This document shows positions 2,135-62,637 of a stretch of DNA of 64,000 nt, piece after piece. The DNA lies in contig NC_068990.1 in assembly GCF_001194135.2 (NCBI RefSeq), positions 88,216,086 to 88,280,085 of the forward strand, written 5' to 3'. How positions within the stretch are numbered: position 1 is the first letter of the stretch; each line of letters starts with the position of its first letter. This DNA comes from Octopus bimaculoides (taxonomy: Eukaryota). A program made the translations under genes and the position numbers. Below the pieces are notes generated by a model. It was not told the origin of the DNA and searched no databases. It was given only the letters and a program-made list of their open reading frames with translations.

Positions 2135-2371
2135 ATACTCAGATCCATTTTATGAAAATAAATGATGCATTTCTGGATGTAAAAGGGAAAACATTGTTGC
2201 CTAAGAAAAATGCAACAGCAGATGATTGTGCAGAAAAATGTTTGTCTGATAAAAGTTGTTTATCGTTTGAAATAACTAAAGGAAGTGGAAACTGTTACTT
2301 ATCAAAGCAAACTGCAGCTTCCACACAATTAAAGGCTGACAAAAGCAGAGATTACTATCAACGACTACAAG
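2135..2371 (+). CDS. Exon A1, PAN module type A
   Basis: ctag|AT...CAAG|gtaatt, 237 nt; [25 protein letters not shown]. Confidence 0.9.

Positions 2372-62637: not shown

What the first reader, a model, noticed from the sequence alone, without database searches (positions are those of the whole stretch)
2135..62637. Giant, fully intact (PAN-PAN-CCP)n array protein, likely cephalopod-specific
Seen: 34 of 34 exons are open, splice-competent and keep all 4 Cys (136 in total). Every length variant is a whole codon (237/240, 231/234, 168/171 nt), while the introns are heavily decayed, which indicates purifying selection on a live gene of more than 2395 aa. The array continues both ways: the C-to-A intron block (CATATTCAGTTACATCCTTTTACA, ~1680) precedes A1, and A11 has no partner B in the window. 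Established: PAN modules mediate carbohydrate/protein binding (HGF and plasminogen N-domain, factor XI apple domains, apicomplexan MIC lectins), and CCP modules occur in complement regulators and adhesion proteins. I know of no characterised protein with 10 or more PAN-PAN-CCP repeats. Inference: a multivalent lectin-like recognition, adhesion or mucus/skin protein.
Basis: partly seen in the sequence, partly recalled or inferred. Interest (0 to 1): 0.9.

Follow-up and report, generated by a model that had tools for sequence, protein, structure and literature searches.

The report
Giant octopus PAN-PAN-Sushi repeat gene
This 60-kb piece of the two-spot octopus genome holds 34 intact exons, one slice of a roughly 600-kb array found only in octopuses, which encodes hundreds of small disulfide-bonded binding domains and probably makes a very large secreted binding protein that nobody has studied.

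Summary
On the + strand, 2135-62637 carries 34 exons (11 A, 10 B, 13 C). All have AG/GT splice sites, phase 1-1, lengths that are multiples of 3, no stops and 4 Cys each (136 in total, 2395 codons). A and B are PAN/apple domains and C is Sushi/CCP. All five N gaps lie in introns. One gap is an unmerged 238-bp contig overlap that creates a false partial C exon. The unit is not strictly A-B-C: three units are A-B-C-C.

The window is Octopus bimaculoides chromosome CM046610.1, 88.216-88.280 Mb. NCBI model LOC128248837 matches my splicing of B7..A11 exactly, apart from one cryptic donor. The array continues about 535 kb downstream on the same strand and ends in a GON domain. The NCBI models break at assembly gaps or begin at Met codons inside exons. 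O. vulgaris has unit-for-unit orthologues.

Selection keeps the reading frame, the splice sites and every Cys, but amino acids change fast (dN/dS about 0.5-0.8). The full A-B-C architecture turned up only in Octopus. A 465-aa neighbour gene (signal peptide, PAN, PAN, Sushi, GON; "GON-Abd-1" type) looks like the founder.

Whether the array is one giant mRNA, several genes or a set of chosen cassettes remains untested. Its function is inferred only.

The parts
2135..2371 (+). Exon A1 (PAN), 237 nt, phase 1-1
   Evidence: tblastn; AG/GT, frame and 4 Cys
4290..4520 (+). Exon B1 (PAN), 231 nt
6501..6671 (+). Exon C1 (Sushi), 171 nt
   Evidence: Sushi 26.6 bits
7608..7847 (+). Exon A2 (PAN), 240 nt
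   Evidence: PAN_1
9609..9842 (+). Exon B2 (PAN; 'GYDTF' subtype), 234 nt
   Evidence: subtype
11222..11389 (+). Exon C2 (Sushi), 168 nt
13407..13643 (+). Exon A3 (PAN), 237 nt
14872..15105 (+). Exon B3 (PAN), 234 nt
16052..16222 (+). Exon C3 (Sushi), 171 nt
18630..18800 (+). Exon C4 (Sushi), second C of unit 3
20878..21114 (+). Exon A4 (PAN), 237 nt
23417..23650 (+). Exon B4 (PAN), 234 nt
24723..24893 (+). Exon C5 (Sushi)
27245..27484 (+). Exon A5 (PAN), 240 nt
28574..28807 (+). Exon B5 (PAN; 'GYDTF' subtype), 234 nt (start corrected from 28580)
30594..30764 (+). Exon C6 (Sushi)
32262..32432 (+). Exon C7 (Sushi), a recent local duplicate of C6 (about 95% identical over about 550 bp)
32626..32863 (+). 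Assembly artefact: 238 bp identical to 32378-32615, repeated after the 10-N gap. It holds the false 'partial C' at 32626-32685
35321..35560 (+). Exon A6 (PAN), 240 nt
35828..36061 (+). Exon B6 (PAN); the A6-B6 intron is only 267 nt
37489..37659 (+). Exon C8 (Sushi)
40241..40480 (+). Exon A7 (PAN); last exon not covered by any public protein model I retrieved
42054..42287 (+). Exon B7 (PAN); NCBI model LOC128248837 starts at a Met codon inside this exon
   Evidence: O. vulgaris orthologue 83% aa identical
44457..44627 (+). Exon C9 (Sushi)
45605..45775 (+). Exon C10 (Sushi), second C of unit 7; no gap between C9 and C10
47053..47292 (+). Exon A8 (PAN); the NCBI model uses an internal GT donor after 47157 and drops 45 aa
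48421..48651 (+). Exon B8 (PAN), 231 nt
50694..50864 (+). Exon C11 (Sushi)
51813..52052 (+). Exon A9 (PAN)
53878..54111 (+). Exon B9 (PAN; 'GYDTF' subtype)
55306..55476 (+). Exon C12 (Sushi)
56773..57012 (+). Exon A10 (PAN)
   Evidence: 88% aa identical to O. vulgaris
59362..59595 (+). Exon B10 (PAN)
60956..61126 (+). Exon C13 (Sushi)
62398..62637 (+). Exon A11 (PAN); its partner B11 lies about 1.8 kb past the window end
1680..1703 (+). Conserved block of the C-to-A intron, about 455 nt upstream of A1; copies at 39789, 56301 and 61967

Best explanation
The window holds 34 consecutive internal coding exons, about 10.5 repeat units, of a very large gene locus specific to the octopus lineage. It lies on Octopus bimaculoides chromosome CM046610.1.

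Each unit encodes two 4-Cys PAN/apple domains and one or two Sushi/CCP domains. Every exon is phase 1-1, so the domains join in frame like beads on a string.

The array runs about 600 kb on one strand. It starts downstream of an NDUFV1-like gene and ends in a GON domain and a stop codon just before a CACHD1-like gene.

It most likely arose when the A-B-C cassette of an ancestral small gene was amplified many times. That ancestral type (signal peptide, PAN, PAN, Sushi, GON) still has a 465-aa paralogue 81 kb upstream of the window.

Shown:
- The exons are real and conserved one-for-one between Octopus species.
- Selection keeps them open and keeps all Cys.

Inferred:
- The exons are spliced in series into one or a few very long mRNAs.
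- The product is a secreted, N-glycosylated, lysine-rich, non-membrane protein.
- It acts as a multivalent extracellular binder of carbohydrate, polyanion or protein ligands, with fast-evolving domain surfaces.
- A glandular secretion such as posterior salivary gland saliva, or a mucus or matrix, is the likeliest setting.
For: Anatomy and selection.

Domains:
- Pfam PAN_1 and Sushi.
- AlphaFold model of one unit, pLDDT 81.8.
- Foldseek matches to prekallikrein/FXI apple domains, T. gondii MIC4, the S. muris SML-2 lectin, and plasminogen and HGF PAN domains.
- Sequence matches among solved structures to MIC4 and to CR1/CR2/DAF CCP modules.

Identity of the locus:
- NCBI protein LOC128248837 equals my splice of B7..A11, except for 45 aa of A8.
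- The window maps with 0 mismatches to CM046610.1.

Continuity:
- Intact, unannotated exons B12, C16 and A13 lie between two NCBI models.
- Models begin at Met codons inside exons or next to N gaps.
- Gap-free O. vulgaris DNA shows the same unbroken series, including exons that its own models skip.
- An O. vulgaris model of 4470 aa starts at the B7 orthologue (collinear over the window's B7..C13). By position and length it corresponds to several O. bimaculoides models.

3' end: GON domain at 120 bits, a stop codon, then an unrelated gene.

Founder paralogue and shared exon phases.

Orthologous exons elsewhere in the array: 8% nt divergence, 0 stops against 13.9 expected, 64 of 64 Cys kept.

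Secreted character: no hydrophobic segment, 29 N-glycosylation sequons with one invariant per B exon, pI 9.0, 14% Lys.
Against: - I could obtain no transcript or peptide evidence.
- No model in any of the three species joins the whole array, and none has a signal peptide.
- No protein model I retrieved covers the first half of the window, A1-A7.
- dN/dS of about 0.8 between orthologues is close to neutral at the amino-acid level.
- A single gene of about 600 kb and more than 20,000 codons would be exceptional.
- The 5' end was not reached.
- The tissue of expression is unknown. The salivary-gland link rests on the name of the small paralogue's Abdopus cDNA entry, and on my memory of the paper behind it.
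Confidence: 0.6

Rival explanations
1. The locus is a tandem cluster of several separate multi-unit genes. Each would have its own promoter, signal peptide and terminator that I have not recognised, so it is not one transcription unit. The window would then hold parts of two or more such genes.
For: All three annotations split the array into many models of 380-4470 aa. The O. bimaculoides and O. vulgaris models both start at the same B7 exon, which could mark a real internal start. No model I retrieved covers A1-A7.
Against: Every model start I examined is a Met codon inside a PAN exon or lies next to an N gap, and none has a signal peptide. Model ends read through into an intron or use cryptic donors. 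Intact in-phase exons fill the spaces between models. A search with the paralogue's N-terminus found no signal-peptide exon in about 400 kb of array DNA, although this was a weak test. Only one GON end was found among the array pieces I scanned.
Confidence: 0.23
2. The array is a bank of alternative cassettes. Mature mRNAs would carry the 5' signal-peptide exon, one or a few chosen A-B-C units and the 3' GON exons. This would give a large family of roughly 50-kDa secreted isoforms with different binding surfaces, a diversity generator in the manner of Dscam cassette choice.
For: All cassettes are phase 1-1, and the GON exon accepts phase 1, so any subset stays in frame. The conserved paralogue has exactly one unit. 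Surfaces evolve fast while the scaffold is fixed. Each unit is kept one-for-one across species rather than homogenised. Some models skip exons.
Against: No RNA evidence. Gene predictors join consecutive exons for thousands of residues. I did not look for docking or selector elements. Exon skipping in models may be a prediction error.
Confidence: 0.12
3. The array is a decaying relic or an assembly or annotation artefact and makes no functional product.
For: There are N gaps and one assembly duplication in the window. dN/dS is near 1 between species. The first half of the window has no retrievable model.
Against: There are 0 stops against 58 expected in the window, and 0 against 14 between species. 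All Cys and all splice sites are kept, and indels are whole codons only. The same exons are intact in an independent, gap-free O. vulgaris assembly.
Confidence: 0.03

Closest known systems
Octopod 'GON-domain' protein: GON-Abd-1 of Abdopus aculeatus (UniProt R4G2C1) and O. bimaculoides LOC106874924 (465 aa)
   Same: Same A (PAN), B (PAN) and C (Sushi) modules in the same order. Same exon boundaries and phase 1-1. A GON domain at the end. Same chromosome and strand, 81 kb upstream of the window.
   Different: It has one unit, not dozens to hundreds. It has a signal peptide. It is at least 90% identical between Abdopus and Octopus, whereas array units are 73-93% identical even between Octopus species. 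From memory, unverified here: the entry name follows the naming used in a 2013 survey of coleoid posterior venom-gland transcripts (Ruder et al., J Mol Evol).
Multi-apple microneme proteins and lectins of Apicomplexa (T. gondii MIC4, S. muris SML-2)
   Same: Tandem PAN/apple domains used as multivalent carbohydrate binders. They are the best sequence match among solved structures and among the top fold matches.
   Different: They have 2-6 apple domains, no Sushi and no GON. They come from an unrelated lineage, with only 14-16% identity. Sugar binding by the octopus domains is untested.
Factor XI / plasma prekallikrein apple domains; plasminogen and HGF N-terminal PAN domains
   Same: Same fold (Foldseek probability 1.0; plasminogen PAN rmsd 2.3-2.4 A over 76-78 residues). 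HGF's N domain binds heparin, and the octopus product is lysine-rich with pI 9.
   Different: Apple domains have 6 Cys, whereas these have 4. There is no protease or kringle partner. The copy numbers differ by orders of magnitude.
Long CCP-rich proteins (SVEP1, complement receptor 1) - the name some annotations give these models
   Same: Sushi modules encoded by phase 1-1 exons. The C exons match CR1/CR2/DAF CCPs and SVEP1-like proteins.
   Different: No vWA, EGF or pentraxin domains were found. Sushi is the minority module here. 'SVEP1-like' is a misnomer.
ADAMTS9 / ADAMTS20 / GON-1, and protease-less ADAMTS-like matrix proteins
   Same: C-terminal GON domain. Octopus ADAMTS proteases themselves carry an A-B-like PAN pair. 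A protease-less ancillary-domain protein is the ADAMTS-like design.
   Different: No M12B catalytic, disintegrin or thrombospondin repeats occur in the window or in the family's models.

Membership tests
PAN/apple domain (Pfam PF00024 PAN_1) | Profile match above the curated cut-off | tested here: met
   57.5 and 68 bits against a cut-off of 21.4, with two stretches per unit (A and B)
PAN/apple domain (Pfam PF00024 PAN_1) | Core cysteines (at least 4) in conserved positions | tested here: met
   4 Cys in each of the 21 A and B exons, invariant columns. Disulfide pairing itself was not tested.
PAN/apple domain (Pfam PF00024 PAN_1) | Fold: a helix packed on a curved beta-sheet | tested here: met
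   AF2 model pLDDT 81.8, with one helix plus 4-5 strands per domain. Foldseek matches to apple/PAN structures at probability 1.0.
PAN/apple domain (Pfam PF00024 PAN_1) | Carbohydrate or protein binding | not testable with these tools
   Needs recombinant domains and binding assays
Sushi / CCP / SCR (Pfam PF00084) | Profile match, 4 Cys and the conserved Trp | tested here: met
   10 of 10 C exons tested match nearly the whole model (positions 1 to 52-56 of 56). Seven are above 20.7 bits and three score 17.6-20.3. 4 Cys and an invariant Trp. Matches to CR1/CR2/DAF among solved structures.
GON-domain proteins (Pfam PF08685) | GON domain present in the same polypeptide | tested here: inconclusive
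   GON (120 bits) ends the array 535 kb downstream, in LOC106869402. There is none in the window, and a physical link by mRNA is not shown.
Octopod SP-PAN-PAN-Sushi-GON family (GON-Abd-1 type) | Homologous A, B and C modules with the same exon structure | tested here: met
   E = 2.8e-65 and 50% identity to window units. Same boundaries and phases in L007.
Octopod SP-PAN-PAN-Sushi-GON family (GON-Abd-1 type) | Signal peptide and a single unit | tested here: not met
   The window has 10.5 units and no signal-peptide exon. It is a derived, amplified relative, not an orthologue.
ADAMTS metalloproteases | M12B catalytic domain and thrombospondin repeats | tested here: not met
   Only PAN and Sushi families scored in the window units and the family's models
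SVEP1 | vWA, EGF and pentraxin domains | tested here: not met
   Absent from the window units and the models
Gel-forming or tethered mucins | Long Pro/Thr/Ser-rich O-glycosylated tracts; vWD/CysD or a TM anchor | tested here: not met
   No such tracts and no hydrophobic segment. The composition is Lys-rich, with S+T about 16%.

The most novel reading that the evidence does not exclude
The array of roughly 300 phase-1 exons may be a cassette library. Octopus cells would splice one signal-peptide exon to a chosen subset of A-B-C units and then to the GON exons. This would yield hundreds of different secreted PAN-PAN-Sushi-GON isoforms, a combinatorial diversity system for saliva or venom or for immune recognition, comparable in logic to Dscam. 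The less exotic novel reading carries about 0.45 probability: all exons are included, giving one secreted protein of about 20,000 residues, among the largest known in animals.
Probability: 0.12. Interest if true: 0.9.

Novelty: new variant of a known kind. Interest (0 to 1): 0.62.

Why it matters
If the exons are spliced in series, this is one of the largest protein-coding genes in any animal, with a new architecture of hundreds of PAN and Sushi modules capped by a GON domain. It would also have been invented within octopods by amplifying a three-exon cassette of a small neighbouring gene.

That makes it a clean case study of how exon amplification builds giant lineage-specific proteins. It would also be a candidate major component of an octopus secretion (saliva, mucus or matrix) that has escaped study, because every annotation fragments it.

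Two further points matter:
- A rigid Cys scaffold, individually conserved units and near-neutral surface change are the pattern seen in recognition molecules.
- For genome annotation, at least six or seven 'uncharacterized' or 'SVEP1-like' models per species probably belong to one locus.

Tried and rejected
- A word-index search with the GON tail of LOC106869402 returned nothing, not even the protein itself. This is an index limitation, not evidence of absence. Pfam then confirmed GON.
I rebuilt it from units cut out of returned proteins.
- Eight literature searches and three text look-ups found no paper on this locus, its LOC numbers, or octopus PAN/Sushi/GON proteins. 'GON' appeared in no main text I looked up.
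- A search for a signal-peptide exon like that of the small paralogue found nothing significant in the window or in six loci. The query was short and divergent, so the test is weak.
- Rfam and tRNA scans of the window found nothing.
- Rejected: pseudogene or relic.
- Rejected: SVEP1, ADAMTS or mucin membership (see the membership rows).
- Rejected: the partial C at 32626 as a 35th exon. It is an artefact.
- Rejected: the idea that CC pairs are artefacts of hidden A and B exons in gaps. C9-C10 has no gap, and CC pairs recur in gap-free O. bimaculoides and O. vulgaris DNA.
- Rejected: each A exon as a first exon with its own signal peptide. The hydrophobic '[12 protein letters not shown]' translation upstream of A exons is the polypyrimidine tract before a conserved phase-1 acceptor, and it mostly lacks an ATG.
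- I could not reach the 5' end of the array. No retrievable protein model lies between the NDUFV1-like gene and the window.

Full report
OBSERVATION. A tblastn search of the window with one A, one B and one C peptide gave 34 full-length hits, all on the + strand, plus one partial C. I set boundaries at the nearest in-frame AG acceptor and GT donor (B5 corrected). This gave 11 A exons (237/240 nt), 10 B exons (231/234 nt) and 13 C exons (168/171 nt).

Every exon is phase 1-1, has no stop codon and has exactly 4 Cys. Together they total 7185 nt, which is 2395 codons and 136 Cys. The first and last exon ends fall on the finding's coordinates.

The order is ABC ABC ABCC ABC ABCC ABC ABCC ABC ABC ABC A, so the unit is not strictly PAN-PAN-CCP. 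The CC pairs are real. C9-C10 has no gap between them. CC pairs also recur in gap-free DNA of O. bimaculoides and O. vulgaris.

GAPS. All five N runs lie in introns, at least 183 nt from an exon. Four sit in or beside (TA)n or (TG)n microsatellites. The fifth, 32616-32625, is flanked by two 238-bp copies that are 100% identical (TRF). It is a contig overlap that the scaffolder failed to merge. The partial C at 32626-32685 is therefore not real, and C7 is complete in front of the gap. No reading frame depends on continuity across a gap.

MORE THAN CHANCE. I applied random substitutions to each exon-type consensus at the observed divergence. About 58 stop codons are expected and none is seen (P about 4e-27). 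Alignment gaps are 0.3-0.7% in exons, always whole codons, against 6-53% in intron flanks. Identity is also higher in exons. Pairwise dN/dS among paralogous exons is moderate, with medians of 0.68 (A), 0.46 (B) and 0.52 (C).

WHAT THE EXONS ENCODE. Pfam gives PAN_1 twice per unit (57-68 bits against a cut-off of 21.4). It gives Sushi for every C exon tested, nearly end to end, with 7 of 10 above the cut-off. An AlphaFold model of one A-B-C unit has mean pLDDT 81.8. Its best PDB matches are:
- prekallikrein and factor XI apple domains;
- the Toxoplasma MIC4 apple pair;
- the Sarcocystis SML-2 galactose lectin;
- plasminogen and HGF PAN domains.

A sequence profile also hits MIC4 with the B region, and complement receptor and DAF CCPs with the C region.

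The 2394-aa product of the window has no hydrophobic segment. It has 29 N-glycosylation sequons, one of them invariant in every B exon, with pI 9.0 and 14% Lys. This is the make-up of a secreted, glycosylated, basic extracellular protein.

WHERE IT IS. A homology search returned only Octopus proteins. One of them, O. bimaculoides LOC128248837 (1133 aa), is identical to my splice of B7 through A11. The exception is 45 aa of A8, which the model drops through an internal GT donor after 47157. Its locus overlaps the window with 0 mismatches in 31,930 bases. The window is therefore CM046610.1:88,216,086-88,280,085 of assembly GCA_001194135.2. No protein model I retrieved covers A1-A7.

THE ARRAY IS FAR LARGER THAN THE WINDOW. 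Downstream on the same strand come B11 C14 C15 A12. Next are intact but unannotated B12 C16 A13, and then LOC128248838, which starts at a Met codon inside B13. Further models follow: 1865 aa, LOC128248840, and 4083 aa. An older model, LOC106869390, lies further on. Last comes LOC106869402. Its 5' end is cut by a 794-N gap inside an A exon, and it ends A-B-GON-stop at about 88,815,828 (GON 120 bits). An unrelated CACHD1-like gene follows.

Exon density in all the pieces I read is about 0.5 per kb. The locus of about 600 kb should therefore hold roughly 300 exons and about 20,000 codons. This figure is an extrapolation.

Upstream, three things point to continuation:
- A1 has a phase-1 acceptor.
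- The conserved C-to-A intron block lies about 455 nt before A1, as it does before A7, A10 and A11.
- In O. vulgaris a 2247-aa family model ends 2.9 kb before the orthologue of B7.

The upstream limit is an NDUFV1-like gene that starts at 88,140,287.

ORTHOLOGY. The first 660 residues or so of O. vulgaris CAI9728790 (4470 aa, spread over 416 kb) line up unit for unit with the window's B7, C9, C10, C11, B9, C12, A10, B10 and C13. Identity is 80-88%, against at most 77% to any paralogue. A second pair of loci has the same exon series in both species, including one aberrant B exon. These are O. bimaculoides L004 and O. vulgaris L006, both gap-free.

Across 16 orthologous exons of that pair:
- nucleotide divergence is 8.0%;
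- there are 0 stops against 13.9 expected (P about 6e-7);
- all 64 Cys are conserved;
- pooled dN/dS is 0.79.

Selection therefore protects the frame, the splice sites and the disulfide scaffold of each unit, while surface residues change almost freely. The units are old. The best paralogous nucleotide identity is at most 84%, apart from C6/C7, which are a recent local duplication of about 550 bp at about 95% identity. B exons fall into recurring subtypes: U2, U5 and U9 share a 'GYDTF' form. This hints that the array grew by blocks of several units.

LINEAGE. I searched a profile of 13 A-B-C units against 1.84 billion representative proteins. Full-length A-B-C matches came only from O. bimaculoides, O. 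sinensis and O. vulgaris. Argonauta hians has A-B-like PAN pairs in other contexts. Octopus ADAMTS proteases carry such a pair too. The nearest matches outside cephalopods are PAN repeats of the annelid Dimorphilus and generic multi-Sushi proteins.

ORIGIN. The last homology search found 'GON-Abd-1' of Abdopus aculeatus, family Octopodidae. Its cluster includes O. bimaculoides LOC106874924. This 465-aa protein has a signal peptide, then A, B, C and GON. Its gene lies at 88,124,138-88,134,746, 81 kb upstream of the window on the same strand. It has the same A, B and C exon boundaries and phases, and a GON exon that accepts phase 1. O. vulgaris accession numbers place its copy three models before the 4470-aa model.

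The simplest history is a duplication of this small gene, followed by massive internal amplification of the three-exon cassette in one copy. On that history the array gene is expected to have one signal-peptide exon at its 5' end and the observed single GON end.

From memory, not checked here: the 'GON-Abd' naming follows a 2013 survey of coleoid posterior venom-gland transcripts (Ruder et al., J Mol Evol). This makes the posterior salivary gland a lead for expression. It is not a finding.

ONE GENE OR MANY. For one gene or a few very long ones:
- The strand and phase are uniform throughout.
- Model boundaries coincide with gaps or with Met codons inside exons.
- No model has a signal peptide.
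- Model ends are intron read-through or cryptic donors.
- Intact exons lie between models.
- An O. vulgaris model starts at the B7 orthologue, and by position and length it corresponds to several O. bimaculoides models.
- Only one GON end was found in the array pieces scanned.

Against:
- There is no RNA evidence.
- Both species' models start at B7, which is unexplained.
- The size would be extraordinary.

Cassette choice is a minority alternative. It is compatible with the universal phase 1-1 design and with the one-unit paralogue.

VERDICT. The locus is real, only partly and poorly annotated, and uncharacterised. It is built from known modules in a new, octopod-restricted architecture. The size of the product and its function remain inferences.

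Noticed in passing
window 158-505, 928-1287, 6796-7449, 55653-56058: The introns carry transposon debris: a reverse-transcriptase fragment, a mariner-type transposase fragment (Transposase_1, 44 bits), a zf-RVT fragment and an integrase core (rve). The first two sit in the intron upstream of A1 and explain why no C exon is seen in the first 2.1 kb.
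   Followed up: partly
window 32378-32615 and 32626-32863: Two 238-bp copies, 100% identical, lie on either side of a 10-N gap. This is an unmerged contig overlap in assembly GCA_001194135.2, and it fabricates a partial Sushi exon.
   Followed up: yes
window 30443-30996 vs 32111-32924: C6 and C7, with about 550 bp of their flanks, are about 95% identical. The 1.1 kb between them is unique. This is a recent small duplication of a single exon, unlike all the other, much older units.
   Followed up: partly
window 47157/47158 (inside A8): NCBI model LOC128248837 uses a GT donor inside A8. This removes 45 aa and three of the four Cys of that PAN domain. It is either a prediction error or a real alternative splice.
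   Followed up: partly
window 42054-42287 (B7): The O. bimaculoides model and the independent O. vulgaris 4470-aa model both begin at the same exon, B7. No retrievable model covers the six and a half units before it. This could be a coincidence, annotation transfer, or a real internal transcription start.
   Followed up: no
all A exons vs B and C exons in the window: Synonymous divergence among the A exons is about half that among the B exons (mean pS 0.26 against 0.48), although they were duplicated together. Gene conversion, or constraint at the nucleotide level such as splicing enhancers, might explain it.
   Followed up: no
window 35561-35827: The A6-B6 intron is only 267 nt. Every other intron in the window is 0.9-2.9 kb.
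   Followed up: no
window 15404-15530, 43845-43967, 18300-18450: The introns hold long microsatellites: (TG)63, (TAA)41, and (TG)n around a gap. Most assembly gaps in this region sit in such runs.
   Followed up: partly
L006 vs L004 (O. vulgaris vs O. bimaculoides, same units): The same exon series occupies about 2.6 times more DNA in O. vulgaris: 96 kb against 36 kb, and 416 kb for a 4470-aa model. The array's introns have therefore expanded or shrunk greatly since the species split.
   Followed up: no
proteins P0097 and P0146 (outside the window): Octopus ADAMTS-type metalloproteases carry a C-terminal PAN pair that matches the A-B profile. This links the family's modules to ADAMTS ancillary regions.
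   Followed up: partly
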